Shown here in pieces: positions 529 through 50,700 of a stretch of DNA of 64,000 nucleotides; the stretch's first letter is position 1, and the number at the start of each line of letters is the position of its first letter. The stretch is from positions 558,001 to 622,000 of the forward strand of contig OZ037769.1 of the NCBI GenBank assembly GCA_964035545.1. The letters are read 5' to 3'. The position numbers and the translations under genes are program-made. This DNA is from Bugula neritina. Taxonomy: Eukaryota; Animalia; Bryozoa. The notes under the pieces are model-generated. The model was not told where the DNA came from. It saw only the letters and a program-made list of their open reading frames with translations, and ran no database searches.

Positions 529-9511
<8,983 letters not shown>

Positions 9512-17308: not shown

Positions 17309-24605
<7,297 letters not shown>

Positions 24606-27291: not shown

Positions 27292-30200
27292 CTACTGTCT
27301 ATCTGTACTATCATAGAGCTCATTGTCTAGCATGTTCACCTGCCCATCTGTTTTATCATAGAGGTCATTGTCCAACATCTCCACATTGACACTCCCTGCA
27401 GGTGCTCCAGAACTGTCATATAGACTGTTGTCCACAAACTCAACTTCATCTGCTTTGGGTGGTAATACCGGGGCCTCCTCGTAGATCGGCTGGGAAGGCT
27501 GAGATGAGATCTTGGGCTTTTTGTGATGATTTGGTTGAACTGATGCGTACAACTCAGCAACATTTCTATAACAATTTAAAGTATAAAATGTGAAACTAAA
27601 GATTGAATATTTTTATCTGAAAAACTAATTGTTACAGCTGTTTACATTTATTTAATAGCACACATTCTACCTATCTGTGAATCACACACCATGTGACACT
27701 ACAGATCATGTGACTTTATAAATGATGTGACCATGCTTTTAGGGCAAAACAATTCAAATAACTAATATATGAAAGTTTATTCTAGTAATTGCACATAAAT
27801 TCTCTGTTTCTCGTAGCTCCAGTAGGAGATTGCTCATGGGGAGCAAACTTCTCACATTGACTCAATAAAAGCTGCACTAAGACTCACCTGTGCTTTTCCT
27901 TGCTCAGGTTTGGCTTCTTTGGTAGATTATTGGCTTCTTGGGAGGCAGAACTTGCTGCTACAACAGAAGGGATACAGAAAGTTAGTCTACAAGATTCAAC
28001 CACTTTAATTAATGCAAACTCAAAGCACCTTTTTATGTTATAGTAATCTTTTGCTTATCACGTAATTGGAAAATAGTGGAAACTCTGAAGTATAAAAGTT
28101 TGATTACAGCATTTAAACAAGAAGCTTCATGTTTTGATACTAATTTGCTTCTATGTATGTACTAGTAAGATCAGACAGGTTGAGGTTAGCCTGTTCCCTC
28201 TAGTTCTATCATGTCAACCTAAGAGAAACCACGCTATACTCTCAGTATACTCTACCTGAGGTTGTAGCTGCAGCATAGGTAGGGTCCAATTCAAAGGCAG
28301 GATTATCTACAAGATTATGAAAAGGATATTTTCAAATTATCAACGTAATGTAACAACTCGGACTTTTGCCAAAAAATGTGTTAATTGATTGTAGTTTAGT
28401 GTTTCGCATACTAGTTAGTGATCAAGGACATAGTTGTCTTCCCTTTTCAACTGACTTTTATATAACTAACTGTTGAATATATGCTCCAATACTTAGTGTC
28501 ATATTCCAGAGAGTGGCTGATGCATTTCCTTTAAACCATGAAGTATTATTGCTATAGCAACTTAATGCACCATGATAAATAACACTGAATACTAAATCGT
28601 ATTGGATAGAATAAACGTTGACACATTTTAGTAAATATAGTAATAATCAGTAAATACTACAGTGATCATTGACTTATACATGATACGTGTCTAAAATAAT
28701 ATATCGAGAGAAAGTAACTCTCACTATAACTAATTTTAGAGAGAAATTACATGTACCTGTAGACTGCCTGTTATTTTCTTCTACACTTGCCTTGGTTGGT
28801 CTGAAACAGATGTGAACCTCACAGATTAACGTGGTACACATTGCAGGAAACAGCAGTTGGTTATGGAAACTTGAATATGTGTCATACTACATGTTAGTGG
28901 TATAATATTCATTTAACCACAGAAATGTGTTTAAATTATGTTCTCACCAGTCAAAGAAATGTGAAAGTTTCTATGAAGTAAAAGCACAGAATATGACCTA
29001 CTCCAAAATGCATTGCATTATAATATTCACATGAGAACTGGGCAGATAAAACTGTTTTTTTAATTATTTAAAAATGAGTGTTGAAGGAAATTAGCCATGG
29101 AATGTGTATGTATGCATGTATTGAGAACTTTGGGATGCAGGTACAGTATACAATCAGTTACGAATAATCTGTGATGAAGTGCACTGATTGGCTGACTCTA
29201 ACATTCCCATCATACTATAGACTCTATAAGCTCTGGAAATTTTTGAAAACTTCAGGGCAACTTTTAAATAAATATTACACTTATTTTTTTCATTAATTGA
29301 TATGGTGAGATGTATATAACTCTACAATTGATACAAATAATTTCTTGAAACAAAGGCTAAATATAAGCAGAGCAATATTTTTTTTTTTAGTTACTATAAT
29401 TGCCGTTTACAAATTCACTAGTCGAGAAATGAAATATATGTTTTTACAGGACAACATTTACGATAACATACTGCTATACAGTAATAAGTATATAATATGA
29501 TGCATTGTGGGATAGCCTGCATGAGTACCAACCTATGACGTAGACATCTAGCTATTAGGATCACTACTATAATCACCACCACCAGGGCTCCCCCTCCAGC
29601 TATCAGGGCAATGTGATATGGTTCTAAGATTTTTCCTGCATCTGCAAGGGGATATCAATACAGTAACATAACTTGTATCAAAGCAATACATATACAATAT
29701 CAAAATATTATATTCAAGATGTTAGCATATATTTATACAATTTTCTCAATTTCTTTTCTAATCATCAGGAAGAAAAGCTATGCAATTATGCAGTATTCTT
29801 TAAATATTGCTTGATTCAAATAAATCAATTTCAATATACTATGTATATATATAGCATAATATAATATAATTCAGAAATACATATAGAAATCAGTAATTAT
29901 CTTGTTGTACACTGCATTTCTTATTCTGTGTACAAAAAATTGTTTACCTCTAATTTATACTACTACCTCTACTTCCTGTTCATTACCATTACCATTACCT
30001 TTATTTTCAACACAACCAGGGTCATGTGACCAGTTACCAGACTCTGTACAGATAGGATCTGTAGTCTTAGAATAACCATCATCACATGAGTAGAGTAGAT
30101 TATCTCCTCCGTAATATCTGTCCAGTGTGATGGTACCACTAGCTAGGGTTAGTGCTGCTGGGTCACACTCAGCTGTTATAAAATACATTATACAAGTATG

Positions 30201-33200: not shown

Positions 33201-34795
33201 TTAGTTCCGAGAAACACACATGCCTACCTTGCGCTGCTTTTTGTATAAATAAATTGCATATTATATAGTAATTTAAAGTATCTACTTGACTGATGCTTAT
33301 ATATAATGAAAACTAAATATAATATCAGATGGTGAAATTTAAATTATGCACGTTGATGTTCATATGCTTTGTAGTTATACGAACTATTTTAAAATCTAAA
33401 TCAAATCAAATTTACTATCATGCTAGTAAAGTTTACTTTACACTTATCACAATCAGTATTTGTTTTTAAATTTACCTGTTGTAAAGAACTCTAGGTTAAA
33501 TCCTGTCATGTTGCTGAGAGTAGAAACTGATAATACAGACTGTTCTTGAGTGAACCTCTGTATAATACCAGGTTCTCCAAAGTCAATACAGTATGTTGTA
33601 CCATCTATCTGTATTTCTGGACAGATTATAGCACCTGTTTCAGGTGTCCTAAATCCTGGTATACTGATATAACTATCAGCAGGTGTTCTCAGAGTTAGAC
33701 TACATCTAACAGGTGCTCCCTCTATCTCTCTATGTTCTATTATCCCTGCATATCCTCTATCAAATTTCACTGTGTTATTATCACATATATTCACTGGTTT
33801 AATATCTTGTCCTTTTATAAACAGGGTAAAGACACAGGATATCAGTATGAGTTGCAGAGTGGTAGGCTGAAATTATACAGTTTAGACAATATCATGCTAC
33901 ATTATAACTCTCATTAGATGATTAAATGCATGGGTTGTAGAGCTTTCACTTATGCTTTTCATTAACGCTACTCCAGTTCATTTGTATCATATTTAGTTTC
34001 ATCATCACTACTTCTCCATGCCTATCACATTACGTGAATGGATTTTTCATTTAAGGCATGACCGTAGTAATATAAAGCTACAATAGACACATTACATATT
34101 TATCTGCAACTTTTAATGGTAAACAAAAGCTAAACTATGTCTACATAAGCTAAAGCATTAGGATAAAAGCAACCAGGAAATTGAGACCCAAACGTAATGG
34201 ATGAAATCTCAACTTAAGTTCTTTAATTTTAAACATAATATTTATGGGGATAAAAGTTTCCCTTTTCACTTGCAATTGTTAACTAAAGTAGGATATACTG
34301 TTAATGGGGATGAAATTTAGCAATATGAGTATGTTTTACTAGCTTTAGTATGCTAAAGCAAAGGTTTACCACAAAACTTGATTTGCTTGCTGCAACACAA
34401 TGCTTAATCACTGAGCTGGCTTAAAAGTGTAAACTTACAAGCCAGCTCAGTAATAGGCTGTGTATTGTAGCAGCCATGAAGATTACATAGAGCGAAGGTT
34501 AGCTATAACTAGAATTACTAAAGCACAACTCCGAAGCCAACAAGGAATCAAAACTCCCAAATTTTATTATAATAATATAAAACAAACTTGTTTGGACATA
34601 CAATTTTCAAATAGCAACTATATAATTACTTTATGTTGAAGGAATTAGTATATAATATTAGAATGCCAGATTTCCCAGAGCAATATTAAAAAGGTAGTTT
34701 GGCAACAGCAGCTTAAATTGATCAACTTTACTCAATTAAACAGTTTATTTTGCATCATACTGCAAGATGTTATTTTAAAAGCTGTTACTCACCAT
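27292..34795 (-). CDS. Receptor paralogue A: signal peptide - 2 CUB-like - 4 CCP/Sushi - TM - Tyr-rich tail without ITAM, 12 coding exons, ~687 aa
   Basis: Exons 34795-34793 (ATG only), 33866-33476, 33058-32708, 31158-30958, 30871-30674, 30553-30356, 30172-29999, 29641-29533, 28800-28757, 28306-28256, 27957-27888 and 27565-27292 total 2064 nt. Domain exons are phase 1-1 apart from the first. Sushi pattern C..Y.C..GY..C...W....C. TM IALIAGGGALVVVIIVVILIA. Confidence 0.85.
32401..32471. repeat. Three abutting short palindromes (32401-32431 with a 3-nt bulge; 32431-32462 perfect; 32462-32471)
   Basis: agtccacta[taa]gacttaagtctagtggact; tatatatacctctgaattcagaggtatatata; atccatggat. Confidence 0.85.
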
Positions 34796-36100
34796 TTTGA
34801 AAGAATGCATCTCTGATAATATAATCTAAGATTATTATAGTATTCTTACGACTTGCCACGTCTACTGTATAATATAGTATATTATAACTCTACCCTTGCA
34901 ATATTTGATAAGTCTCAAGTTTAGTAAATATTAACTTTAATCAACACAGCCTTCTTTATACACAGAGCTGTGAACTTCCTTGTATGACTATACACACATC
35001 ACTATACAATATACTAGCTATCTATTTAGATGACTGATATAGCTTCTGCTTTACCTCAACCTATTCTTCTTGTTTATTTAGTGATTATTGTGTCTTTGTA
35101 GTCTACATAATAGAATACATGACTATTCTATTCAACACTAGAAATAGTAAGCAGTGATTATCATGCAACTTTTAGACTGTCTCCATGGTGAAGATTGAGA
35201 GCATAGGAGATGATATTTTGTTACAATTTATCTTTAATAGTTTTATTATAATATCATGGAACTAAGAAATCATATAGTCTATATAATATAATATTATAAT
35301 AATAAAACATTCACAGATATATTCCAATCAGAAAACTATATATAATAAGTAATCAAACACAATCAATATACATTTACTGTTATCTTATATTGAAATAAAC
35401 AAACAACAGAATTGAAAAACTATTTTATCATAAATTTTTTATTGAAAATAATTGAATTATATGGCAACAATGTCTCAACGTAATTCTGCAATCAAAATAA
35501 AATATTATTACAAACGTCTTCTAACAGAAATATTAATTGATTATATCAATATTTGATTAAATGCATATGATTGTCTAACTGATGAATATACCTAAAGTTA
35601 TGTCCCCTTGCAATGTAACCCGAGACTCCCATAATATTGTATTATATTCATTTCTCTAGGCAATCTCATGGTTGATTTCTGCATATAACTATTTTGATTT
35701 ATATCATTAAAATAAGTCAAAAATAATAAATATGCATAAGGTTACGGAACTCAGGAATTAATTTTACCATAGAAGAGCAGAAATTTTAACCCAGTTGTTA
35801 GTTTAATTATCTTACTGAACTATATTATAGAGATCTATTATTTTAGAACCTTGAAAGCAAACTCAAATTAAATTTTCTACTGATAACTAGCACTTTGCAT
35901 GCTTATATAATAAGTTAAAGAGCCTGTATAAAGTATGTCTAATGGCAAGATATGTCCATAAGAGAAGTAAATCACTTATACTAAATAGAGCTGCAAAATG
36001 TTGCTATAAATGCTGTGATTCAGTTGAATATTATAGATTTGTCAAAACCATTTTAATCATTTGTTCTTTCAATTCTGTTCATTATTATCAGTTTCTCTCT

Positions 36101-39100
36101 CTACTTTCTATCTGTACTCTCATAGAGCTCATTGTCTAGCATGTTCACCTGCCCATCTGTTCTATCATAGAGATCATTGTCTAGCATGTTCACTCTACTA
36201 GTTCTATCATAGAGGTCATTGTCCAACATCTCCACATTGACACTTCCTGCAGGTGCTCCAGAACTGTCATATAGACTGTTGTCCACAAACTCAACTTCAT
36301 CTGCTTTGGGTGGTACCACCGGGGCCTCCTCGTAGATTGGCTGGGAAGACTGAGATAAAATCTCGGGCTTCTTGTGATGATTTGGTTGTACTGATGCATA
36401 CAACTCAGCAACATTTCTACCAGGAAACAACATCATATATTAGTTTAGATAATAACAAGGTAGGATACAAAATATCATGCATTACATAATATGCTACCAG
36501 TACATAGTTTTTCTGGGAATCATTTAAGTCATATGCTCACAAACAGCTAAACCTCTTTCTCAAGATATATCATCCATGTGAAGTTCATTTTATACGCAAT
36601 TAAGGTTAACCCCAACATGTGTTTGATGCAATACAATAAGAAAAAAGGTGGAATGCTTTAATACAAATTTTGATTCATTTCTAAATTTAAAAAAGTAAAA
36701 TTTAAATCATAAATAAAAACTATCAGTTTTCTGCATCTAGTTTAACTGGAGTCGTGAAGCCCAGGTGGCTTAGCACAGCTAGTCTTTTAGCACGTGTTCC
36801 CCAAACATATAAGCTCTACAACCACCAAGACACTCTGCTACCCACCCAAACTTCTTCTGGTTTGGTTTAGGTTTCGTCATAGGAGCAGGCTTCTTGACCA
36901 CGCCCCCTGATATCTCAGCGTAAGCGGAAGCCTCGTCTTCAATCACACCATAAGGCCCGTTGTTTCCGACACTTCCCTGACCTACAATAGGAAGTTGCCG
37001 ATATATTCAGAGACTACAAACTCAACTATACACGCAGATATCATAAAGAGTTTTCAGTGAAGATAAATGAAACTATTCATTGGAAAATCATGTGTCTTGA
37101 ATTGTATTAACAGCTACCTGAATTTTCTCATAAAATATACCGAAGGATAAGATAGAAGTTGCCTACTCTCATATCTATAGACGAAACGTGTGTATTACTA
37201 TATGATTAAGGAGGTAGTCCTGTTAGATATATTCGTACCACAGAAGTAAGTAACAACTTTAGTTACGACAACTTACCTGGCACAGTTGGAATTATATCTG
37301 GACGTTCTAGCTCAAAATATGGATTCTCTACAAGAATACAGCTGAGGTAGAAGCATTGCTTTTAAAGCTCATTGGTACAGAAGCTGTGTGTTTACAGTAT
37401 AAACTATGGAGGAGGAGAGAAAACGCTAAGACTTCATATTGGTTAGACTTAGTTCCTATTAACATGGGAAAAGAGAGTGATAGGCTGCCTTGAACTACGT
37501 TAGCTATATATGCTATCAGGAAGGGTGGGTTGTATACCGTCCCAAACCAAGCAGACAATGCAGTTTACTGTGAAAGAGAAACTTTGAATATAATGTTTAT
37601 TCCTTCGAATAAAGTATTTCTTGACCCTCATGAAGAGCTTATGTTTACAAAGAGTAGTAGCTAGTGAAAGTAGTATATTCCTCCATACAGTTGAATGATA
37701 TTTTGGTATATTGATCATGTATACTATTATACTGTGTAGTAGTAGCTAGTTAAAGTAGTGTATTCCCCCCTCCCCACACAGTTAAATGATATTTTGACAG
37801 AGAATAATATTTACCTTTGCTGAAAGATTGTCTGTTATTTGCTTCTCCTGAAGGGGCCTCCTTAGGGCTGTTAATAATCAAATAGAAAAAATAAGGTGGA
37901 GTTTTCAAAATCTTCATTATTTGAGATTCACATGCCATTGTAATTGCAACAAGTATTATACATAACTTCCAAGGTGGTATAGTGCATAACATATTATCTC
38001 ACTTTAGTTTTAGCAGAGCAAATCAAGTTGTTTCTTGGGGCTCCATAAACTAAACGCAAAAGATAATTTACAATATCATTTAGCATGTAAGATGTACTAC
38101 ATAAGATATAATATGTTATAGCATGCAAAGAGGTATAATACTATATCATAATATCCCTTATATGTTGCGTAATATTATTATGTAATGTAGTGTTATGAGA
38201 TTACAGGAAATGAATTTTGATTTACAAGTAAGTCAATATTTATAGTTAAATATGTTTACTTATATTATAATATACTGCTATACAGCAATAAATATAATAA
38301 TCTGATACATTGTGGGACAGCCTGAGTACCAACCTATGACGTAGACATCTAGCTATTAGGACTACGACTATAATCACCACCACCAGGGCTCCCCCTCCAG
38401 CTATCAGAGCAATGTGATATGGTTCAAAGAGCTTTCCTGTGTTTGTAACAAATATCAATACAGTAACATAACTTGCATCAAAGCAATATGTATAATATAT
38501 ACAATATCAAAATATTATATTCAAGATGTTAGCATATATTTATACAATTTTCTCAATTTCTTTCACCAGGAAGAAAAACTAAGCTTTTATGCAATATTTT
38601 TTTAATATTGTTTTGATTCAAATAAAATTCAATTTCAATATACTATGTATATATAGCATATAATACATTTCAGAAATACATACAGAAATCAGTAATTATC
38701 TTGTTGTACACTGCACTTTTTATTCTGTGTACAAAAAGTTGTCCACCTTTATTTTATACTACTAGCTCTACTTCCTGGTTATTACAATTACCTGGTGAAT
38801 CAGTTGTGGCAATCACAGGATCTTTATTTGATACGTCACAACCAGGGTCATGTGACCAGTTACCAAACTGTGTACAGACGGGATCTGTAGTCTTAGTATA
38901 ACCATCATTACATGAGTAGAGTAGATTATCTCCTCCGTAATATCTGTCTAGTGTGATGGTACCATTGGCTAGGGTTAGTGCTGCTGGGTCACACTCAGCT
39001 GTTAGATAATATATTATACAAGTATAGAAAATATGCAACAAGCTAAATTGGAATTTATTCAAAGGAAAATATCTAAGCCCTTCTACAAAGTTACTTTCAT

Positions 39101-42100
39101 TCACTAAAAACATAGTAATAGTTTGTAAATGTATAAATTATTCTATAAATTGTAAATTATTAAAACTTTATAAATAACTACCTGTTTGTGTACATTCTGG
39201 AATACTGGACCAAGTTTTATCATGTTGACACTGTATCACATCCATGTTTGTTTTCTTGTAACCATAGTAACAGTCATATGATAGAACTTCTTGGTAAACA
39301 TATGTGTGAGTTGTCCCTCCTTTAGATGTGATGTTAGTAGTGGAAACATTGATGGAGAGATCAGTGATGTCACACTCAACTGAAACAGAAGTTGAGTTAC
39401 AAACATCTCTACAGCCACAGCCTACTATATATACAAATATCATGCATTTGGTATACACTATACAGTATATTTTATGCAGAATAATACTGTGCACTTTCAA
39501 ACTTATTTAAAGAATGACCTCAAAAAATCAGCATTCTGTAACTAAAATAAATGAAACGTTAAATTATGTATAATTTTTCATATTGCGATTTAATAACAAT
39601 AATATGACAATGCAGAACCTAGGCATGCTGCCTTTGGGTTAGCTAACAAACTAAGCAAATAGAAGTATTTATTTCATAGCAATTGTTAAGTGTTCAACAT
39701 TGAGGAAGTGCAGCAGTAGCTTTACAAGGCAGAGCAATAATATTTTATACATTTAGTTGCTGCAGTTTTGAGTATGGCTATTGAGCTCCTCTAAATTAAT
39801 ATACTGCTATATAGTATAAACACATTGTTCTTAGATTACTCCACATTCATGGTATATTATTACTATATACATGTACCTGGTATACATGTTAGAAATATAT
39901 TACTCCATATCCATGGTATATTATCTGTATCAGTAGAACTACATCTGGATACAACTTCTTCTATTCCATCTCTACTCTCATATCCTTTTATACACTTATA
40001 TACTGTTGTATGAGTATCAGTCCTAGTTATAGTAGTAAACTCAACATTTCTTGGCTCCTCTGTACAGTAGGGGACTAGAAAATTGTATAACATAATATTA
40101 ATATATACAACATAGTGCCATATGCTCTACATCTAAAAGGTCACAAAAACATTGACCTTAAGAGTTAGATATTTAATAAAAAGCCATCGGAATCAACTGC
40201 TGGGAAGCTCAAAGCTTTAAGCTGCAGTAGCCTGGAGCTAGTTTTCACAACTATACCAATGGGGTTTCATTGGAAGCATGGGCATGTAGTTATATAGTTC
40301 CAGTTGTTTATAGTAAGGCATTGAAAATCACTATTAAACAAAGCTGAGATACTTAGGGAGAACTGGTATAAGATAATACATTCAAATGCTCCTAAGAGCA
40401 TTTCATCTTTACATTTAAATAACATCACAGAAGTAAAAGCATTTTCAATGTAGCTACAGATCTTTTTAGAATCTTAAAAGTCCAACTTGGATTTAATTAC
40501 ATTTTGATTTGTTGAATAAATCTTTTAGAGACAAATAAAAAACCGAATTCTCACTGGGTGCCATATTTTTAAAAACAAAAGCAGCACATATAGTGGCATG
40601 TGTACCATTGACTCTGGCAGCACCTAGAACATGTTTATGTTTTGTAAGCTAAGAGTTTGGCAGGTGTAGATAGTTTGATGGTGTAAAAAAATGTCTAAAA
40701 AGTTTTTCTAGTTAGCAACAGATTAATACTAGCTATGTTGCATGGCCTTTTAATATAGTATTAGGTTTTGAAACAGAGATTAAAAAATGAATGGCTAAAA
40801 GCAGCACGGAATTGGGTGTGACTGAATGCAGAGCTTGTATAGACCCCCAAACACTGTATACAGTGACCACCAACCCAGTGCTGCTTCAAGCAATTTCTAA
40901 TTGGAAATTAATCTTAGAATTAAAAATGTCTAAAATATTATTTCGAAGTAGCAACAGTCTAATGGGAGTGTAATACTAGCTATGTGGTCGTTAAATATAG
41001 TTGTGAAGTTTTGAAACTGCATGGGATTGAAAAATGAATAATTGCTAAAAGCAGCATGAAGTTGAGGCTGACTGGGTGCAAAGTGCAAAGACCCCTAACC
41101 ATTATAAACTCAGTGACCACCAACCCAGTGCTGCTCAACTCAATTTCCCATCTAAAATTAATTTTAAGCAGTACCTGGAATACATCTAATCTCTGATTGG
41201 TTGACCCACTTAGCCTCTGAACCATCTACTTTACATTCAGAATAAGTTGAGTTATACTTCAACTGATAGTCAGTATCTTCACAAGAATAGTTTATTATTG
41301 TACCAGGAAACCAGGGAGATTCAGTAGATGGAGTACTTGTCACATGATCTATTTCTGGTTTATCTCCACATGTCAACACTGCAAAAATAAATTTACCAAA
41401 ACTTTAGAATAATTCTATACAAAAATTTAACGGTAGCTGCAAAGTACACCATACCACTGTTTCCTGCTAAATATCATATTTACTACAATGAACACAAATT
41501 ACCTAAATATCCCTGCAATAGCTGCAATGTTACTTGTCTCTTTGCTTGCAGCATAATATAATTAAAAGCTGCTGAATTTGTCTATTGCATGACAGATTTG
41601 CCAGCAATAGAGTGGAAGATATAAGAAACTACCAGCACTCTGTAAATACACAACCACTGGGTGTAGGAAATTTCACTGGATATATATAAATAAATTCTAA
41701 CATATTCTAAAATAGGCTATAGGTTTGCTATAATAGCCTATAAGTAGAGGTTTTAAAATTTTCCTGGTTAATTTATGTTTTAGTTAAAGCTGCTACTTTA
41801 AAACACACTTGTAATTAGTTGTCTACAAATTTTATGCTTTTAAAAATTCCTCTTTTAAATTACTCTTTATAGTTTAAATTCTACTCTCTAAATGATAAAT
41901 CTTTGTCCTTTAAGTTAGCCACAACATTTAAATTCCTACTAATTATTTTCTTTCTTGCATAACTAACAGTGAAATCATAAAGTTAATATTGAGTAGCTGT
42001 ATTGTTATATAATATTATGCAACCTTCACTATCGATGATTTCCGCAAAGGCTATGAAAAGCTGTGTTATGATTAGTTGAGTCAACCTGTTGAATGCATGT

Positions 42101-45100
42101 AAAATTCAGAGTGCTAACTGATTGAATTATATGACAATTCAAACTAGTATTTTGCACCAAAAAATCATTTCCCAACATAATATAGCTAGAATTTTAACAA
42201 AGCAGCACTATGTTTCAAAAAATATGTTTAGCCCAACAGTAGATGGAGATGGAAATTTAAGTAGTGTTTCAACATCGATATTATAATAGTATTGACAACT
42301 CTTCTGTAATAAGTCAATAATCCTAGATCTGCTTTTAAACTGAGGGGAATTGAAAAGATATTAACAATTAAATCTTTCCACAATTTAATCTTTGTTCAAT
42401 AAAGTCTAAAAGCCTACTGGATTATTTGCAATTAACCGGGCTGTTGTGTAATATAATAGTGGCAACTATATAAGCTGCTGTTGTATATCAGTTTCTTAGA
42501 ATACCAACATATGGACACTAATAATCATTAGCATGTCTGCAGAAATAAACTTTCAATAATAAAGAGAAAAATTTAAAAGGTTTATTTAAAATTAAAGAGC
42601 TACCGCAAACTCAAAAATTAAATTAGCTACTGGATTTTAAAAATATTTATTAAGTAGTATATATAAAACCATAGAGTTGTTTAAAAATAATCACAATAAA
42701 TTATATTATTTAATTTTTGAACCCAAATTATTTTATTGCGAAGTTGTTGCAGCAGTAAAGTTGCTTATATTCTCGTAACCTTTGTCTTATTCATCTAGAA
42801 TTCAAACATAGCATCAGTAATTATAGATGAGCTTCTTTACCAATATAACAAAATTATGCAAATACAGCAAGTTATTGTTTAGTATCAATGTTTATCTACG
42901 ACTGTTATCATTTTGATATGCAATCTAGAGCATTGTCAAATTTGCGCTGGTCTTCATATTTGCTAACAATTGCTGTCCATTGAGCATATATCTCAAGGTA
43001 ATTATATTCCATTTTTAATCAGACAACTTTCTGTCAATTTTAATTATAAAAACTTATTCCGTGAAATTATTAATAATCCATGACATATTACACCTACAAA
43101 AGCTTAATGACTAATGCTGATAAGCAGTGAGTTATACAGAAAATAGTTTACTGTATTTACTCAATAACATCAAATTATAATAACCCAGGAATTCAATAAA
43201 ATCTACAATCCAGTGGTATTAGACTATTTTTAAATGAAATTATGTCCATCAACAAGATAGTAAATTATTGTCTAATTAAGTATTTTTACAACTAAATATA
43301 TTACTATATGTATAAGCTGCAGTTGTTAACATTTACCTTTGAGTTTACTATACAACTGTTGGTAGAATACTGATAATGCAAATGATACATTACAGTTTGA
43401 ATGGCAATTTACAATATATAGTGATGTAATTTTTGTTTCATTTTTCAAAATACTATTCGAATACAAATATATCTTGTTACTTATATAAGCTGGTATTAAG
43501 ATGGATAATTATACATTTGTAAAGATTTTAGCTATTTTTCTAGTACCGATATATAGATAACAAGGAGGTTTGAGAATGTGATTTAAGTGGTATATAATTA
43601 GATAGGAAACTTTTTCAATAAAAATATGTAGCCTCATAAAGAAACTTTACGTAATATTATAAAGCTAAAAAGGTAAAAAAGACGTATTTTCAATAAACTA
43701 TTGAAATGCAAATTTTAGCTAATTAGCATATAATTATCAATGCTAAAGGTAGCCCTAAAATTGATTGCTTGCAACAAAATTAATTCAGATTGAGTGAAAT
43801 AGACAATGAATTATTCCATATTCTAAACAGAGCTTCACTGGTCAACAACCAATCTATTCCACAAAACGATGAAATTTCGCAATTATAAGTTATTGATTCA
43901 TATAGTGGGTATACCCACTATATGAATCAATAACTTATAATTGCAAAATATCTTTTATAAGCGTTAGGCCTATATTATTCTATTTCCACAACAAATAAAT
44001 ATTTTTTATTATAATAAAAAATATTTATTTGTTGTGGAAATAGAATAATATAGGCCTAACGCTTATAAAAGATATTTTTAGTGTTTTCAGATTTTAAATT
44101 GTACAGTAGGCTACATAGAAACGATAACATAGTAAACTCTCTCACTCACCTGTAAACTGAATCATAAAGAATACTGGATCTACATCTCCAGTTACAGGAT
44201 CTCCTTCATTTTCATATCTCACAGAGAGTTGGTTGTTTGTAGAGGTTATGTTATGTAGATATCCATCGGGGAAGTTAGCAAACTCCTGATTATCAATAAA
44301 CCAGGAGATTCTGGATGATTCTGTAAGCTCAGTAATCATATCAAACCTAACATAGTGAGCTTCACTTGGTAGGTTTGATATTGTAAACTCACAGGATGAT
44401 AATGACTGCTTACTAGTTGTATTATAGGAGGTGGTGAATATTCCAGTCAACTGTTCAACTTGCGGTCTGTCTGGTATCTGAATATCTTCACTACATGATG
44501 TCACTGTGAAAGTAGTATATCTTTTTTATACTTGGCAGTAGTAATGATGCCGTATATCAGCATTAAATAATGAAATTTTTAGAGTAGTTTACCTGTTGTA
44601 TGCAAGAGTATAAATATTTACCTGTGGTAAAAAACTCCAAATTGAATCCTGTCTTGTTGCTGAGATTAGAAACTGATAATACAGACTGTTCTTGAGGGAA
44701 CTTCTGTATTATACCTGCAGGTTGTGTAGAGTCAATACAGTATTTTGAACTTTCTATCTGTATCTCCTGGCAGTTTGTATCACCTTCAGTAGATCTTGTC
44801 CTAACTCCTGGTATACTGATATAACTACCAGCAGGTGCTCTCAGAGTTAGACTACATATAACAGGTGATCCCTCTATCTCTCTATGTTCTATTATCCCTG
44901 CATATCCTCTATCAACTGTCACTGTATTATTATCACATATATTCACTGGTTTAATATCTTGTCCTTTTATTAACATGATGAAGACACAAGATACCAGTGT
45001 GAGTTGCAGAGTTGTTGGCTGAAATTATACAAGTATGTGAGTATTATACAAAATTATTATAAATGTTTACTCACTAGTTACTCAATACATGCATAGAATA

Positions 45101-46364
45101 TACAAATTTTAATTCCTTTCAGTAAAAAACACTGCTCAATGCTCTTTATTCTATCATAGTCTGTTAAGTTGCTATTTAAACAAACTAGAATTTTATTGGG
45201 CATTATATTAATTGGTGTATAATTCTTCGAAATTTGAAGCCTTAGAAAACTAATAAATAACCGTAAAAATTGCCTGATTTGCTAATTGTCAAACTTTTGG
45301 AATATTCTAACTAATATAATTACAACATTGAAATGATTAGCCAATATGTCATTTAGAGGAAATACTAAACAGTATAACAAAAAATTATAATGTATTTTGC
45401 CAAAAGCTTTAGAAGGGCATCTCAGAATTAATGCAAATATTTCTGCAGATTTAATAGCTTGTAGCCTATACATACATGTTGATGAAACCAAAATGTGCCC
45501 TGGCAAGGTCTCACATAGGATGCATGCATTATTAATATGTTGGATTTTAACATATGCACAGATAAATAGTAACAATTATTGAAACAGGTGTTAATTTTAT
45601 TTTGCTTTTAGTTAGTGACAAAAAATTATTAGCACTACCTAAATTATCAACAGGAAATACAGTTGCATCTTTTTTTATTTAATAATTTTTGCCACCAACA
45701 AGCTCAATACTGGTGCCAGATATACTTAATATTCCTAATATGATATGAATGCTTCTTCTTCATTTTAATTATATGGACATAAATGTTCTACTTTCCACTT
45801 GCAATTGTTGACTAAAATTGTGATACTGTCAAATTATAAGGACAAAATTTAGCAATATAAGCATATTATTCTAGTTTTGGAATTGTAAAACAAAGGTGTT
45901 TCACTAAACTTGATCGGCATACTGCAACACAATGAAGCTTAATCACTGAGATGGCTTACAAGTGTAAACTCTCAAGCCATCTCAGTGAAAAGCTGCGTGT
46001 TGCAGCAGCTAAGGATAGCATATGGAACAGAAGTTAGCTATAATTAGTATTATTAAAGCACAATCTCAAAATCAGCTGGGAAATGTAGTCTGCATGCATT
46101 CTGCAAGGAATCAGACTTCCAAGTTTATTATAATATAAAACAAACTTGTTTGAACATACAATTCTCAAAGAACAACTATATAGTTGTTTTATGTTAAGGA
46201 TTAATTATTGAAGTTAATATATTATGTTACAATGTCAGATTTCCCAGAGCAATATCAAAAAGGTAGATTGGCAACAGCAGCTCAAACTAATCAATGTTGC
46301 TAAAAACAGTCTATTTTGCATCATACTGCATGTTGCTATACTTTGAAAGATGTTAACTCACCAT
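36101..46364 (-). CDS. Receptor paralogue B: signal peptide - 2 CUB-like - 4 CCP/Sushi - TM - tail with ITAM and 4 DNxLY repeats, 12 coding exons, ~739 aa
   Basis: Exons 46364-46362, 45018-44622, 44503-44150, 41378-41175, 40074-39877, 39379-39182, 38998-38792, 38436-38334, 37867-37815, 37327-37277, 36981-36846 and 36416-36101 total 2220 nt, all phases compatible. ITAM YGVIEDEASAYAEI at 36911-36952. Confidence 0.87.
40724..41170. repeat. Diverged tandem duplication (~247-bp period) in a paralogue B intron
   Basis: taatactagctatgt...gctaaaagcagca...cagtgaccaccaacccagtgctgct occurs from 40724 and again from 40971. Confidence 0.8.
43879..44078. repeat. Two back-to-back perfect spacerless palindromes (66 bp, 43879-43944; 134 bp, 43945-44078)
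   Basis: Symmetry checked by eye around centres 43911/43912 (gggtataccc) and 44011/44012 (ttattataataa). Confidence 0.93.
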
Positions 46365-47734
46365 TTTGAAATAATGCATCTCGTAGAATATAATCCAGCT
46401 CTAACTGAAAGCTATTACAATATTCTATTATAGTTGAACATTTACCTTTGCTACTATAGTCACATCTACTGTATATATAATATAGTGTATTATAACTCTA
46501 CCCTTGTGATATTTGATAAGTCTCAAGTTTAGTAAATATTAACTTTAATCAACACAGCCTACTTTATACACAGAGCTGTGAACTTCCTTGTACGACTATA
46601 CACACATCACTATACAATATACTAGCTATCTATTTAGATGACTGATATAGCTTCTGCTTTACCTCAACCTATTATTCTTGTTTATTTAATGATTATTATA
46701 TCTTTGTAGTCTACATAATAGAATACATGACTATTCTATTCAACACTAGAAATATTAGGCAGTGATTATCATGCAACTACTATAAGACTGTCTCTACTGT
46801 GAAGATTGAGATGCTATTTTGTTACAATTTATCTTTAATAGCTTTATTATAATATCATGGAATTAAAAAATTATATAGTTTATGTAATAATATAATAATA
46901 TAACATTCACACATGTATTTCAATTAGAAAACTATATAATAAGTAATCAAACGCAATAAATATACATTTACTGTTATCTTGTATTGAAATAAACATACAA
47001 AAGTTTTTAATAGAATTGAAATAGTAATTTATCATAAAATCCGTCTTGAAAATAATTGAATTATACGGAAACAATGTCTCAACGTAATTCAGCAATCAAA
47101 ACAAAATTTATTTAAGCATAATAAAATATTACAAATGTCTTCTAACAAAATATTAATTGATTATATCAATATTTGATTAAATGCATATGATTGTCTAACT
47201 GATAACTGATAAGCATACTTAGAGTTATGTCCCCTTGCAATGCAACCTGACAGTCCCATAATACTGTATTATATTCATTTCTCTAGGCAATTACTTGGTT
47301 GATTTTTGCATATATTTATTTTGATTTATATTATTAAAGTAAGTTAAGAATAATAAGTATGCATACTGTCACGGAAGTTTCAAATCAAGTTTACTATAGA
47401 AGGGCTGAAATTTTAACCCAGTTGTTAGTTTAATTGCCTTACTGAACTATATTATAGAGATCTATTATATTAGAACCGTGAAAGCAAACTCAAATTAAAC
47501 TTTCTACTGATAACTAGCACTTTGCATGCTTATATAATAACTTAAAGAGCCTGTATAAAGTATGTCTAATGGCAAGATATGTCCATAAGAAAAGTAAATC
47601 ACTTTTACTAAATAGAACTGCAAAATATTGCTATAAATGCTGTGATTGAGTTAAATATTACAGATTTGTCAGAAACATTTTAATCATTTTTTTTTAAATT
47701 CTGGGCATGTGTTCATTACTATCAGTTTCTCTCT

Positions 47735-50700
47735 CTACTTTCTATCTGTACTCTCATAGAGCTCATTGTCTAGCATGTTCACCTGCCCATCTGTTCTATC
47801 ATAGAGATCATTGTCTAGCATGTTCACTCTACTAGTTCTATCATAGAGGTCGTTGTCCAACATCTCCACATTGCCACTTCCTGCAGGTGCTCCAGAACTG
47901 TCATATAGACTGTTGTCCACAAACTCAACTTCATCCGCTTTGGGTGGTACTACCGGGGCCTCCTCGTAGATTGGCTGGGAAAACTGAGATAAGATCTCGG
48001 GCTTCTTGTGGTGATTTGGTTGTACTGATGCGTACAACTCAGCAACATTTCTACCAGGAAACAATGTCATATATTAGTTTAGATAATAACTAAGTAGGAT
48101 ACAAAAAACAATATTACATAATATGCTACCAGTACATAGTTTTTCTGGGAATCCTTTGAGTCATAGGCTCACAAACAGCTAAACCTTTTTCTCAAGATCT
48201 ATCATCTATGTGAATTTCATTTCATACACAATTAATTTGAACCCCAACATGTGTTTGATGCAATACAATAAGAAAAAAGGTGGAATGTTTTAATACAAAA
48301 TTTGATTCATTTATAAATTTAAAAAAGTAAAATTTAAATCATAAATAAAAACTATCAGTTTTCTGCATCTAGTTTAACCGGAGTCGTAAAACCCAGGTGG
48401 CTTAGCACAACTAGTCTTTTAGCATGTATTCCCCAAACATATAAGCTCTACAACCACCGAGACATTCTGCTACCCACCCAAACTTCTTGTTTGGTTTAGG
48501 TTTCGTCATAGGAGCAGGCTTCTTGACCACGCCCCCTGATATCTCAGCGTAAGCGGAAGCCTCGTCTTCAATCACACCATAAGGTCCGTTGTTTCCGACA
48601 CCTCCCTGACCTGCAACAGGAAGTTGCCGATATATTCAGAAACTACAAACTCAACTATACACGCAAATATCATAAAGAGTTTTCAGTGAAGATAAATAAA
48701 ACCATCCATTGGGAAATCATGTGTCTTGAATTGTATTAACAGCTACCTGAATTTTCCCATAAAATATACAGAAGCATAAGATAGAAATTGCGTACTCTCA
48801 TATCTATAGACATAACATGTATATTACTATATGATTAAGGAGGTAGTCCTGTTAGATATATTAGTACCACAGAAGTAAGTAACAAAATTAGTTACGACAA
48901 CTTACCTGGCACACTTGGAATTATATCTGGACGTTCTAGTTCAAAATATGGATTCTCTACAAGAATATAGCTAAAGTAGAAGCATTGCTTTTAAAGCTCA
49001 TTAGTGCAGAAGCTGTGTGTTTACAGTACAAACTATGAAGGGGGAAAGAAAACAATAAGACTTCATATTGGTTAGACTTAGTTCCTATTAACATGGGGAA
49101 AGAGAGTGATAGGCTGCCTTGAACTACGTTAGCTATATATGCTATCAGGAAGGGTGGGTTGTATACCGTCCCAAACCAATCAGACAATGTAGTTTACTGT
49201 GAAAGAGAAGTTTTGAGTATAATGGCCATTCCTACGAATAAAGTATTTCTTGACCCTCATGACCAGCTTATGTTTACAAAGACTAGTAGCTAGTTAAAGT
49301 AGTATATCACCCCCCCCCCCCCCCCCCATACAGTTGAATGGTATTTTATGACAGGGAATAATATTTACCTTTGCTGAAAGATTGTCTGTTATTTGCTTCT
49401 CCTGAAGGGGCCTCCTTAGGGCTGTTAATAATCAAATAGAAAAAATAATGTGAACTCCTCAAAATCATCATTATTTAAGATTCATATGCCATTGTAATTG
49501 CAACAAGTATTATCCATAGCTTTCAAGGTAGTATATTGCATAACATATTATCTCACTGTAGTTTCAGCAGAGCGAATCAAGTTACTTCTTGGGGTTCCAT
49601 AAACTCAACGCAAAAGATAATTTACAATATTATTTAGCATATAAGACATACTACATAAGATATATGCTATAGCATGCAGAAAGATATAATACTATATAAT
49701 AATATCCCTTATAATTATGTTGCGTAATATTATTATGTAATGTAGTGTTATGAGATTACAGGAAATGAATTTTGATTTATAAGTAATTCAATCTTTATCC
49801 AAACTATATACTCTGTACCTGTAACAGTACTACAGTATTACATCATAGTATAATAATATGATGCATTGTGAGATAGCCTGAGTACCAACCTATGACGTAG
49901 ACATCTAGCTATTAGGACCACTACTATAACCACCACCACCAGGGCTCCCCCTCCAGCTATCAGAGCAATGTGATATGGTTCTAAGATTTTTCCTGCTGCT
50001 GTAACTGGATATCAATACAGTAGTGTAACTTGTATCAAAGCAATATATATATACAATATAAAATATTATATTCAAGATGTTAGCATATAGTTATACAATT
50101 TTTTCAATTTCTATTCTAATCACCAGGAAGAAAAGCTATGCAATTATGCAATATTTGTTTAATATTGTTTTGATTCAAATAAAATTCAATTTCAATATCC
50201 TATGTATATATAGCATAATATAATATATTTCAGAAATCAGTAATTATCTTGTTGTACACTGCATTTCTTATTCTGTGTACAAAAAATTGTCCACATTTAT
50301 TTATACTACTAGCTCTACTTCCTGGTTATTACAATTACCTTGTGAATCATTTGTGTCAATCACAGGATCTTTATTTGATACGTCACAATCAGGGTCATGT
50401 GACCAGTTACCAGACTTTGTACAGACAGGATCTGTAGTCTTAGTATAACCATCATCACATGAGTAGAGTAGATTATTTCCTCCATAATATCTGTCTAGTG
50501 TGATGGTACCATTAGCTAGAGTTAGTGCTTCTGGGTCACACTCAGCTGTTAGAAAATACATTATACAAGTATAGAAAATATGCAACAAGCTAAATTGGAA
50601 TTTATTCAAAAGAAAATATCTATGACTATCTACAAAGTTAATTTTATTTACATAAATAATCATTACAGATTGTATATGTATAAATTATTATATAAATTGT

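What the first reader, a model, noticed from the sequence alone, without database searches (positions are those of the whole stretch)
36846..36981. Canonical ITAM on its own exon in paralogues B and C
The exon encodes GQGSVGNNGP-YGVI-EDEASA-YAEI-SGG (36911-36952; identical motif in C at 48540-48581). This is YxxI-x6-YxxI with an acidic spacer, the ITAM consensus that docks tandem-SH2 kinases (Syk/ZAP70/Shark). The ORF track misses this exon. SAYAEI also fits the ITIM pattern.
Basis: partly seen in the sequence, partly recalled or inferred. Interest (0 to 1): 0.82.

Follow-up and report, generated by a model that had tools for sequence, protein, structure and literature searches.

The report
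ITAM-like exon in bryozoan receptor genes
Two neighbouring copies of a moss-animal (bryozoan) cell-surface receptor gene carry a small, probably genuine exon encoding the paired-tyrosine signal that immune receptors use to recruit a kinase. The motif occurs only in these two recent copies, and nothing yet shows that the exon is expressed or that the motif signals.

Summary
On the minus strand, 36846-36981 (B) and 48478-48610 (C) are open in one frame only. That frame encodes YGVI-EDEASA-YAEI, which fits the ITAM pattern; SAYAEI also fits the ITIM pattern.

The exon is probably real (my estimate about 0.8).
- It has AG/GT borders.
- Its phases (1 in, 2 out) link a 53-nt juxtamembrane exon to a tail exon whose reading frame is conserved across bryozoan genera.
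- Exons of the same phase class sit at this position in paralogue A (70 nt) and in Watersipora subatra (109 nt).
- It is a GC island (0.51 against 0.32).
- It diverges less between B and C than the flanking introns, and differs by an in-frame 3-nt indel.

B and C share a recent 5.5-kb duplication or conversion tract, so their identity is not independent support. No orthologue of the exon was found. A and Watersipora lack the double-tyrosine motif.

The genes belong to a family of about 22 sushi-repeat receptor genes. Other members carry unrelated tails with YEQL-x7-YEQL or YEKL-x6-YENI. This scan already reported those tails on other DNA of this genome.

The genome encodes a Shark-type kinase (SH2-ankyrin-SH2-kinase) and an SHP-2 orthologue.

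Verdict: a new member of a known kind. The signalling role is plausible but untested.

The parts
36846..36981 (-). Paralogue B, 136-nt cytoplasmic cassette exon (phase 1 in, phase 2 out) carrying the ITAM-like motif
   Evidence: One open frame only. AG/GT borders. GC 0.51, in the top 1% of 136-nt windows. B-C divergence is 2 substitutions plus a 3-nt in-frame gap, against 7.5-16% in the flanking introns.
36911..36952 (-). Motif YGVI-EDEASA-YAEI in B (ITAM pattern; SAYAEI also fits the ITIM pattern)
37815..37867 (-). B juxtamembrane exon, 53 nt (encodes PKEAPSGEANNRQSFSK); takes phase 2 from the TM exon and hands phase 1 to the ITAM exon
   Evidence: Read. 0/53 differences from C. Partly conserved in A.
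38334..38436 (-). B transmembrane exon, donor CATAG|GTTGGT (phase 2)
   Evidence: The junction is identical in A, B and C, and a 4-nt indel just after it marks the start of the intron.
36101..36416 (-). B terminal exon: conserved bryozoan Tyr-rich tail module (LYASV, IYEEAP, four hydrophobic-x-N-x-x-Y motifs) plus stop codon
   Evidence: The same phase-2 acceptor with a split Gly codon is seen in the Watersipora subatra gene model.
38757..39380 (-). B, the two membrane-proximal sushi (CCP) exons. Further sushi-like exons lie at about 39866-40093 and 41167-41379, and two N-terminal beta-sandwich domain exons at about 44145-44504 and 44617-44946.
   Evidence: Pfam Sushi E=5e-8 and 1e-4; exon ORFs
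48478..48610 (-). Paralogue C, 133-nt copy of the ITAM exon (motif at 48540-48581)
49369..49421 (-). C juxtamembrane exon (53 nt, identical to B)
47735..48050 (-). C terminal tail exon (98% identical to B)
27888..27957 (-). Paralogue A, 70-nt exon at the same position and of the same phase class (1 in, 2 out), with no tyrosine
   Evidence: No blastn match to the B exon. An orthologous A-type exon is present on a diverged metagenome contig, L023.
28757..28800 (-). A juxtamembrane exon (44 nt)
27292..27565 (-). A terminal tail exon (same module, one NMLDNDLYDR repeat fewer)

Best explanation
The 136-nt segment is a genuine, constitutively required cytoplasmic exon of two recently duplicated type-I receptor genes, B and C. 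They belong to a family of about 22 sushi-repeat receptor genes in a bryozoan. The exon sits about 30 residues inside the membrane, between a short juxtamembrane exon and a Tyr-rich tail module that is conserved across bryozoans.

Inferred mechanism: after ligand-driven clustering, a Src-type kinase phosphorylates both tyrosines of YGVI-x6-YAEI. The doubly phosphorylated motif then docks the two SH2 domains of the genome's Shark-type Syk-family kinase, making B and C 'ITAM-plus' versions of a receptor whose sister A is 'ITAM-minus'.

Shown here: Inferred: splicing, phosphorylation, kinase recruitment and any activating output.
For: Exon reality:
- Only one frame is open.
- With the conserved phase-2 donor of the TM exon, the 53-nt and 136-nt exons add 189 nt (63 codons). 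That is exactly what is needed to read the tail exon in the frame conserved in Watersipora subatra and in metagenomic relatives.
- A needs 44+70 = 114 nt. The Watersipora counterpart is 109 nt, with the same phases and the same split Gly codon at the tail acceptor.
- It is a GC island, 0.51 against a window mean of 0.32.
- B-C divergence is 2 substitutions plus an in-frame 3-nt gap, against 7.5-16% in the flanking introns (Fisher p = 5e-4).

Motif:
- It fits the ITAM consensus. The chance of the pattern in a tail of this composition is 0.0055.
- Ten other family members carry sequence-unrelated single-exon tails with YEQL-x7-YEQL or YEKL-x6-YENI. The paired-tyrosine pattern therefore recurs on three different tail sequences of one receptor family.

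Readers:
- An SH2-ankyrin-SH2-Tyr-kinase gene lies at C7:14.371-14.378 Mb. Apart from one EGFR entry ranked first with no separately scored stretch, its kinase exon best matches SYK and ZAP-70.
- CSK is present.
Against:
- About 13% of intronic 136-nt windows are as conserved between B and C as the exon.
- B and C are not independent: their 3' 5.5 kb is 88-92% identical, introns included.
- No orthologue of the exon was found in the genome itself or in the 5.8-billion-cluster protein collection. The JGI metagenome scan was also blank, but that blank is weak, because records close to this genome are withheld there.
- The positional counterparts in A, in A's diverged orthologue and in Watersipora lack the double motif.
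- The spacer is 6 residues, the motif is encoded on one exon, and there is no acidic residue at -3.
- The bare pattern occurs 38 times by chance in this window's six frames.
Confidence: 0.4

Rival explanations
1. The exon is real, but the tyrosines work singly rather than as a bidentate ITAM. SAYAEI could act as an ITIM recruiting the SHP-2 orthologue. Alternatively, YGVI and YAEI could act as YxxPhi sorting signals for clathrin adaptors, or as ordinary single-SH2 docking sites that add to the six tyrosine motifs of the tail.
For: SAYAEI fits [I/L/V/S]xYxx[I/V/L] (definition in PMC9546547), and 'SAY-x-x-I/L' is the one element shared by all three tail types of the family. An SHP-2 orthologue is encoded at C3:23.74 Mb. 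Both motifs fit YxxPhi (general knowledge). The conserved tail already carries LYASV, IYEEAP and four NxxY motifs, so the protein is a multi-tyrosine scaffold whatever this exon does.
Against: The 6-residue spacing and the two I residues at +3 are what a tandem-SH2 reader needs, and the paired pattern recurs on unrelated tails of the family. Nothing here separates the two readings.
Confidence: 0.3
2. The exon is real, but it is a fast-evolving linker, and the paired-tyrosine pattern arose by chance without being used.
For: The exon at this position is highly variable: 70 nt in A, 136 nt in B/C and 109 nt in Watersipora, with no significant sequence similarity between them. The motif is confined to one recent duplicate pair. 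The first-stage scan looked at many windows, so a 0.5% event will turn up.
Against: The per-tail chance is 0.0055. The same pattern recurs on two other unrelated tails in the same family. The spacer is acidic, as is usual for tyrosine-kinase substrates.
Confidence: 0.15
3. It is not an exon. The open frame is a chance or decayed stretch inside an intron, and the true transcript links the juxtamembrane exon to the tail through another segment, or B and C are pseudogenes.
For: There is no transcript evidence. 53 stop-free AG..GT segments with the right phases exist between the two flanking exons, and seven of them pass a crude splice-site filter. The donor GTGGGT is not optimal. Other intronic windows are equally conserved between B and C.
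Against: Five of the seven segments that pass the splice-site filter are hydrophobic or short, and in the largest of them the B and C translations differ at many residues; the other two are the ITAM exon itself and a 12-nt-longer variant with a later donor. The ITAM exon is a sharp GC island, carries an in-frame indel, and matches the exon position and phase seen in A and in the annotated Watersipora gene. All other exons of B and C are open.
Confidence: 0.15

Closest known systems
Drosophila Draper with the kinase Shark (Ziegenfuss et al. 2008, cited in PMC9546547)
   Same: The ITAM sits on the tail of the ligand-binding type-I receptor itself. The tail also carries NPxY-like PTB motifs. [quoted passage not shown]
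   Different: The ectodomain is unrelated (EMI/EGF repeats against beta-sandwich domains plus sushi repeats). There is no sequence homology in the tail. Draper signalling is experimentally proven; here nothing is.
Hydractinia Alr family and Botryllus FcoR family (PMC9546547, PMC12582321)
   Same: These are clustered multigene families of variable surface receptors in colonial marine invertebrates. Members differ in their cytoplasmic tails, some with ITAM and some with ITIM, and Syk/Shark and SHP homologues are present in the genome.
   Different: Those ectodomains are Ig-like (with a sushi domain in Botryllus). The phylum here is Bryozoa. In B and C the motif lies on a separate cassette exon added to a conserved tail module.
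Vertebrate ITAM signalling subunits (CD3, CD79, FcR gamma, DAP12; PMC4536121)
   Same: The motif has the form D/E/N-x-x-Y-x-x-L/I ... Y-x-x-L/I and lies in a short cytoplasmic segment near the membrane.
   Different: The classical ITAM has a 7-residue spacer and is always split over two exons within the first tyrosine module. It sits on a separate adaptor chain with a charged transmembrane residue. Here the spacer is 6 residues, the motif is on one exon, it is on the receptor chain, and the TM has no charged residue.
Other tail types of the same bryozoan receptor family
   Same: The N-terminal domain exons are 83-91% identical and the sushi repeats are shared. The tails share a paired-tyrosine pattern and a YEE-P motif.
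   Different: Those tails are encoded together with the TM on one terminal exon and are unrelated in sequence. A, B and C instead have a four-exon cytoplasmic region built on a tail module shared with other bryozoan genera.

Membership tests
ITAM (immunoreceptor tyrosine-based activation motif) | Sequence pattern Yxx[I/L]-x(6-9)-Yxx[L/I] (PMC9546547) | tested here: met
   YGVI-EDEASA-YAEI at 36911-36952 and 48540-48581
ITAM (immunoreceptor tyrosine-based activation motif) | Classical form D/E/N-x-x-Y-x-x-L/I-(x)7-Y-x-x-L/I (PMC4536121) | tested here: inconclusive
   N at -3 is allowed, but the spacer is 6 residues, not 7
ITAM (immunoreceptor tyrosine-based activation motif) | Lies in the cytoplasmic part of a membrane receptor or adaptor | tested here: met
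   By gene model only: TM exon, then the 53-nt exon, then this exon, then the tail, all in one frame. There is no transcript evidence.
ITAM (immunoreceptor tyrosine-based activation motif) | Classical ITAM is encoded by two exons split in the first tyrosine module (a mark of common descent with the vertebrate subunits, PMC4536121) | tested here: not met
   Both modules lie on one 136-nt exon. This argues against descent from the vertebrate ITAM exons, not against ITAM-like function.
ITAM (immunoreceptor tyrosine-based activation motif) | Both tyrosines are phosphorylated and bound by the tandem SH2 domains of a Syk-family kinase | not testable with these tools
   Needs phosphopeptide binding and mutant signalling assays
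ITAM (immunoreceptor tyrosine-based activation motif) | A Syk/ZAP-70/Shark-type reader is encoded in the genome | tested here: met
   SH2, ankyrin repeats, SH2 and a Tyr-kinase lie in that order on one strand at C7:14371224-14378330. The kinase exon gives E=1e-27 to SYK.
ITAM (immunoreceptor tyrosine-based activation motif) | The motif is conserved in orthologues | tested here: inconclusive
   No orthologue of the exon was found. The positional counterparts in A, L023 and Watersipora lack it. Some searches withhold records close to this genome.
ITIM | Pattern [I/L/V/S]xYxx[I/V/L], and an SHP-type phosphatase in the genome | tested here: met
   SAYAEI; SHP-2 orthologue, E=3e-28 to PTPN11. Binding is not testable here.
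Bryozoan beta-sandwich/sushi receptor family (scan's 'CUB-sushi' family) | Shared N-terminal domain exons and sushi repeats, clustered on one contig | tested here: met
   23 matches to the second N-terminal domain exon, 22 of them on contig C5 and 17 at 78-99% identity. Pfam Sushi hits on two exons.
Bryozoan beta-sandwich/sushi receptor family (scan's 'CUB-sushi' family) | The N-terminal domains have a CUB fold | tested here: inconclusive
   The AlphaFold model of domain 1 has pLDDT 67 and is all-beta. Foldseek found nothing at E<=0.001. The best VIA-align Z was 6.3 to carbohydrate-binding jelly rolls; the TMPRSS6 match (Z 5.6, residues 334-454) falls, from memory of that protein's domain map, on a CUB domain.

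The most novel reading that the evidence does not exclude
A lineage-specific cassette exon has added a complete kinase-docking ITAM to an older, bryozoan-wide tyrosine tail. This would give ITAM-plus (B, C) and ITAM-minus (A) sister receptors with related ectodomains. It would be a caught-in-the-act example of activating and non-activating paired receptors arising by exchange of one phase-compatible exon, in a phylum where no immune or allorecognition receptor is known.
Probability: 0.2. Interest if true: 0.6.

Novelty: new member of a known kind. Interest (0 to 1): 0.4.

Why it matters
Colonial invertebrates such as Hydractinia and Botryllus use clustered, fast-evolving receptor families with ITAM or ITIM tails for self/non-self decisions. 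A full-text search of the held paper library found no such receptor described for bryozoans, although they are colonial and fuse or reject.

This exon shows a fourth tail design within one bryozoan receptor family. It also offers a simple testable contrast: B and C carry the paired-tyrosine cassette, while A has the same tail without it. If the motif recruits the Shark-type kinase, the locus would show that ITAM signalling is used in Lophotrochozoa beyond molluscs, and how such motifs are gained.

On its own the finding is incremental. The family and its other ITAM-type tails were already noted by this scan, and everything about function is inference.

Tried and rejected
2. Orthologues of the exon. 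None turned up in the genome itself, the JGI metagenome scan or the 5.8-billion-cluster protein search. A second metagenome scan with the tail also came back blank, although a JGI contig with that tail exists. That tool therefore withholds records close to this genome, and its blanks are weak evidence.
3. Descent of the exon. I tested local alignments against shuffles: the two other tail types of the family (z 2.8 in a different register, and -0.9), the start of the tail exon (z 2.2, p 0.04), A's 70-nt exon (z 1.4) and the Watersipora counterpart (z 0.2). None is convincing.
4. Exonised repeat. Rejected: the B/C-specific interval between the TM and tail exons is unique in the genome.
5. Long hits of the tail search (P0002, P0003, P0007, P0009, P0010). 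Four have repeat-rich or bacterial-type domain content and P0007 has no Pfam hit; none looks like a true relative.
6. CUB fold of the N-terminal domain. Left inconclusive.
7. C3:23.74 Mb as a tandem-SH2 kinase candidate. Rejected: it is SHP-2. The best SH2 hit on C4 is CSK.
8. Joined spliced protein. I never built one for any search or fold. Exons were searched one by one by reference. The shuffle used only the pooled residues. One script added the single neighbouring base on each side to complete split codons when listing candidate exons.
Full report
WHAT IS THERE. The window is AT-rich eukaryotic DNA, with GC about 0.31. It comes from a 216-Mb assembly. On the minus strand, three tandem paralogues of a type-I membrane receptor lie at about 27.3-33.9 kb (A), 36.1-45.0 kb (B) and 47.7-57.4 kb (C). 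Each has two N-terminal beta-rich domain exons of about 110-120 aa. Four sushi-type exons follow, two of them Pfam-significant (E = 5e-8 and 1e-4). Then come a transmembrane exon and a multi-exon cytoplasmic region.

THE OBSERVATION. Only the frame starting at 36979 is open across 36846-36981; the other two frames contain stops. It encodes ...NNGP-YGVI-EDEASA-YAEI-SGG... The exon is preceded by ttgtag| and followed by |gtgggt. C has the same motif at 48540-48581 in a 133-nt exon at 48478-48610.

IS IT AN EXON? The indirect evidence is fairly strong.
- Frame logic. The TM exon ends in the donor CATAG|GTTGGT. This junction is identical in A, B and C and is followed by a 4-nt indel, which marks the intron. 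That donor is phase 2. A 53-nt exon (37815-37867, ttaacag|CCC...AAAG|gtaaat) takes phase 2 and gives phase 1. The 136-nt exon takes phase 1 and gives phase 2. The terminal exon starts at ggtag|A (36416) in phase 2. Together 53 + 136 = 189 nt, or 63 codons. The alternative phase-0 donor of the TM exon would run into a stop in the 53-nt exon.
- The tail frame is the conserved one. The frame reached in this way is the frame shared with relatives elsewhere. These include a gene of the cheilostome bryozoan Watersipora subatra (GCA_963576615.1).
- Same exon position in relatives. Paralogue A solves the same frame problem with 44-nt and 70-nt exons, 114 nt in all. In Watersipora the exon before the tail is 109 nt, and its gene model (spliced coordinates returned; the genome note reports an Ensembl annotation) uses the same phase-2 acceptor with a split Gly codon. 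The 70-nt, 136-nt (133 in C) and 109-nt exons all leave remainder 1 on division by 3, so an exon of this phase class at this position predates the split of these genera.
- Composition. The exon is a GC island: 0.51 against 0.33-0.35 in the flanking introns, and in the top 1% of all 136-nt windows.
- Divergence. Between B and C the exon has 2 substitutions and one in-frame 3-nt gap. The flanking introns differ by 7.5-16% (Fisher p = 5e-4). About 13% of intronic windows are equally conserved, so this is supportive rather than decisive.
- Alternatives. Phase-compatible AG..GT segments do exist: 53 in all, of which 7 pass a crude filter. Five of those seven are short or hydrophobic, and in the largest of them the B and C translations differ at many residues. 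The other two are the ITAM exon itself and a 12-nt-longer variant with a later donor.
- Skipping the exon would shift the tail into another frame.

I put the probability that the exon is real at about 0.8.

IS THE MOTIF MORE THAN CHANCE? The bare pattern is common in this AT-rich DNA. There are 314 six-frame hits, and 38 lie outside TA microsatellites. In a hydrophilic tail of this composition (165 residues, 8 Tyr, 13 Ile or Leu), residue-pool shuffles give the pattern in 0.55% of trials.

B = C identity adds nothing. The 3' 5.5 kb of the two genes, introns included, is 88-92% identical, while their first N-terminal domain region is only 72% identical. This points to a recent duplication or conversion tract.

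FAMILY CONTEXT. The second N-terminal domain exon of B has 23 matches in the genome, 22 of them on the same contig and 17 at 78-99% identity. In the arrays at 899-951 kb and 702-717 kb of that contig, the TM and tail lie on one terminal exon. That exon ends in either YEQL-x7-YEQL (six genes) or YEKL-x6-YENI (four genes). These tails show no significant similarity to the B/C exon. All three tail types share 'SAY-x-x-I/L' at the second tyrosine and a YEE-P motif. Three different tail sequences in one receptor family therefore carry a paired-tyrosine pattern, which is the strongest argument that the pattern is used.

Earlier notes of this scan had already reported this family and its ITAM-type tails on other DNA of the same genome (s1-456700, s1-456938, s1-456936, s1-456699). 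I re-derived those points independently. What is new here is a fourth tail design.

HOW OLD IS IT?
- The exon peptide matches only B and C in the genome.
- The interval between the TM and tail exons is unique to B and C and is not a repeat.
- A has no nucleotide match to it.
- A diverged orthologue of A, on a JGI metagenome contig with about 75-82% noncoding identity, has the A-type exon without tyrosine.
- The Watersipora counterpart has one TYPMV and no second tyrosine.
- No relative was found in the large protein collection.
- The JGI metagenome scans were also blank. At least that tool withholds records close to this genome, because it missed a contig known to be present, so its blanks are weak.

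The paired motif therefore looks lineage-specific. Its origin is unresolved, since none of the homology tests was significant.

THE TAIL IT IS ATTACHED TO. The terminal exon is a conserved bryozoan module. It has invariant tyrosines in Y-E-E/A-x-P, in N-S/D-x-Y and in M-x-D/E-N-D/E-L-Y, plus LYA-x-V in most members. The repeated hydrophobic-x-N-x-x-Y motifs resemble PTB-domain docking sites; that resemblance rests on general knowledge and was not tested here. The protein is thus a multi-tyrosine scaffold, and the exon adds two more sites close to the membrane.

READERS IN THE GENOME.
- At C7:14.371-14.378 Mb, one strand carries an SH2 with FLVR, three ankyrin-repeat exons, an SH2 with FLIR, and a Tyr-kinase domain. 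Apart from one EGFR entry ranked first with no separately scored stretch, the kinase exon best matches SYK (E = 1e-27) and ZAP-70. This is the Shark layout, a Syk-family kinase with ankyrin repeats between the SH2 domains (PMC9546547).
- A tandem-SH2 gene at C3:23.74 Mb is an SHP-2 orthologue, with E = 3e-28 to PTPN11.
- CSK is present. I did not specifically identify a Src-family kinase.

COMPARISON WITH KNOWN SYSTEMS. The motif fits the general ITAM consensus, and the residue at -3 is one of those allowed (N). It differs from classical vertebrate ITAMs in three ways. The spacer is 6 residues, not 7. The motif is encoded on one exon, whereas classical ITAMs are always split across two within the first module (PMC4536121). 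It sits on the receptor chain itself, with no charged TM residue.

Functionally, the nearest analogue is Draper with Shark in Drosophila. In genomic logic, the nearest analogues are the Hydractinia Alr and Botryllus FcoR families (PMC9546547, PMC12582321). No paper in the library describes such receptors in bryozoans.

The N-terminal fold is unresolved. The model has pLDDT 67 and gives only weak jelly-roll matches. I therefore do not endorse the label 'CUB'.

VERDICT. The exon is probably real. The ITAM reading is plausible and is helped by the family context and by the presence of a Shark-type kinase. It remains unproven and has no orthologue support.

Rivals are single-site use (an ITIM recruiting SHP-2, YxxPhi sorting, or other SH2 docking), a chance motif in a fast-evolving linker exon, and a non-exon.

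Species identity (the earlier notes say Bugula neritina) was not tested here beyond showing that the nearest relatives of the tail are bryozoan.

PROCEDURE. Exons were searched one by one by reference.

Noticed in passing
window 36104-36416 (B), 47738-48050 (C), 27295-27565 (A): The terminal exon is a tyrosine-rich tail module conserved across bryozoans. It has invariant Tyr in YEE-x-P, N-S/D-x-Y and M-x-D/E-N-D/E-L-Y. The last motif is repeated 2-3 times, with a copy-number difference between A (2) and B/C (3). It looks like a row of PTB/SH2 docking sites.
   Followed up: partly
window 36190-36414, minus strand: If the 136-nt exon were skipped, the tail exon would be read in a 74-aa alternative open frame. 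That frame itself contains a chance ITAM pattern, YNQI-x7-YLSL (36346-36390).
   Followed up: no
window 34541-40083 versus 46104-51756: B and C are mosaics. The 3' 5.5 kb (3' flank through three sushi exons, introns included) is 88-92% identical. Further upstream only the exons align, and the first N-terminal domain region is 72% identical. This is consistent with a recent duplication or conversion of the signalling half onto diverged recognition halves.
   Followed up: partly
window 51411-51537 (C): Two extra tandem copies of the 3' end of a sushi exon and its junction lie next to the exon in paralogue C.
   Followed up: no
L024:5984-6092 (Watersipora subatra OY755159.1): The exon that positionally matches the ITAM exon is 109 nt with the same phases and carries a single TYPMV (TxYxxV, ITSM-like). 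The annotated gene model starts at an internal ATG and so appears truncated at its 5' end.
   Followed up: partly
G000 small contigs (e.g. C33, C37, C44, C66, C176, C190): Dozens of intron-less protein-kinase matches on small contigs contain many in-frame TAA and TAG codons but almost no TGA. This suggests contigs from an organism with a ciliate-type genetic code mixed into the assembly.
   Followed up: no
G000:C7:14371224-14378330; C3:23740128-23744618; C4:21875138-21877681: These are the loci of a Shark-type SH2-ankyrin-SH2 tyrosine kinase, an SHP-2 orthologue, and CSK.
   Followed up: partly
window 3213-3361 and 22150-22605: Long TA-rich microsatellites read as YIYIYI... in several frames. 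They account for most six-frame ITAM-pattern hits and are a trap for motif scans.
   Followed up: no
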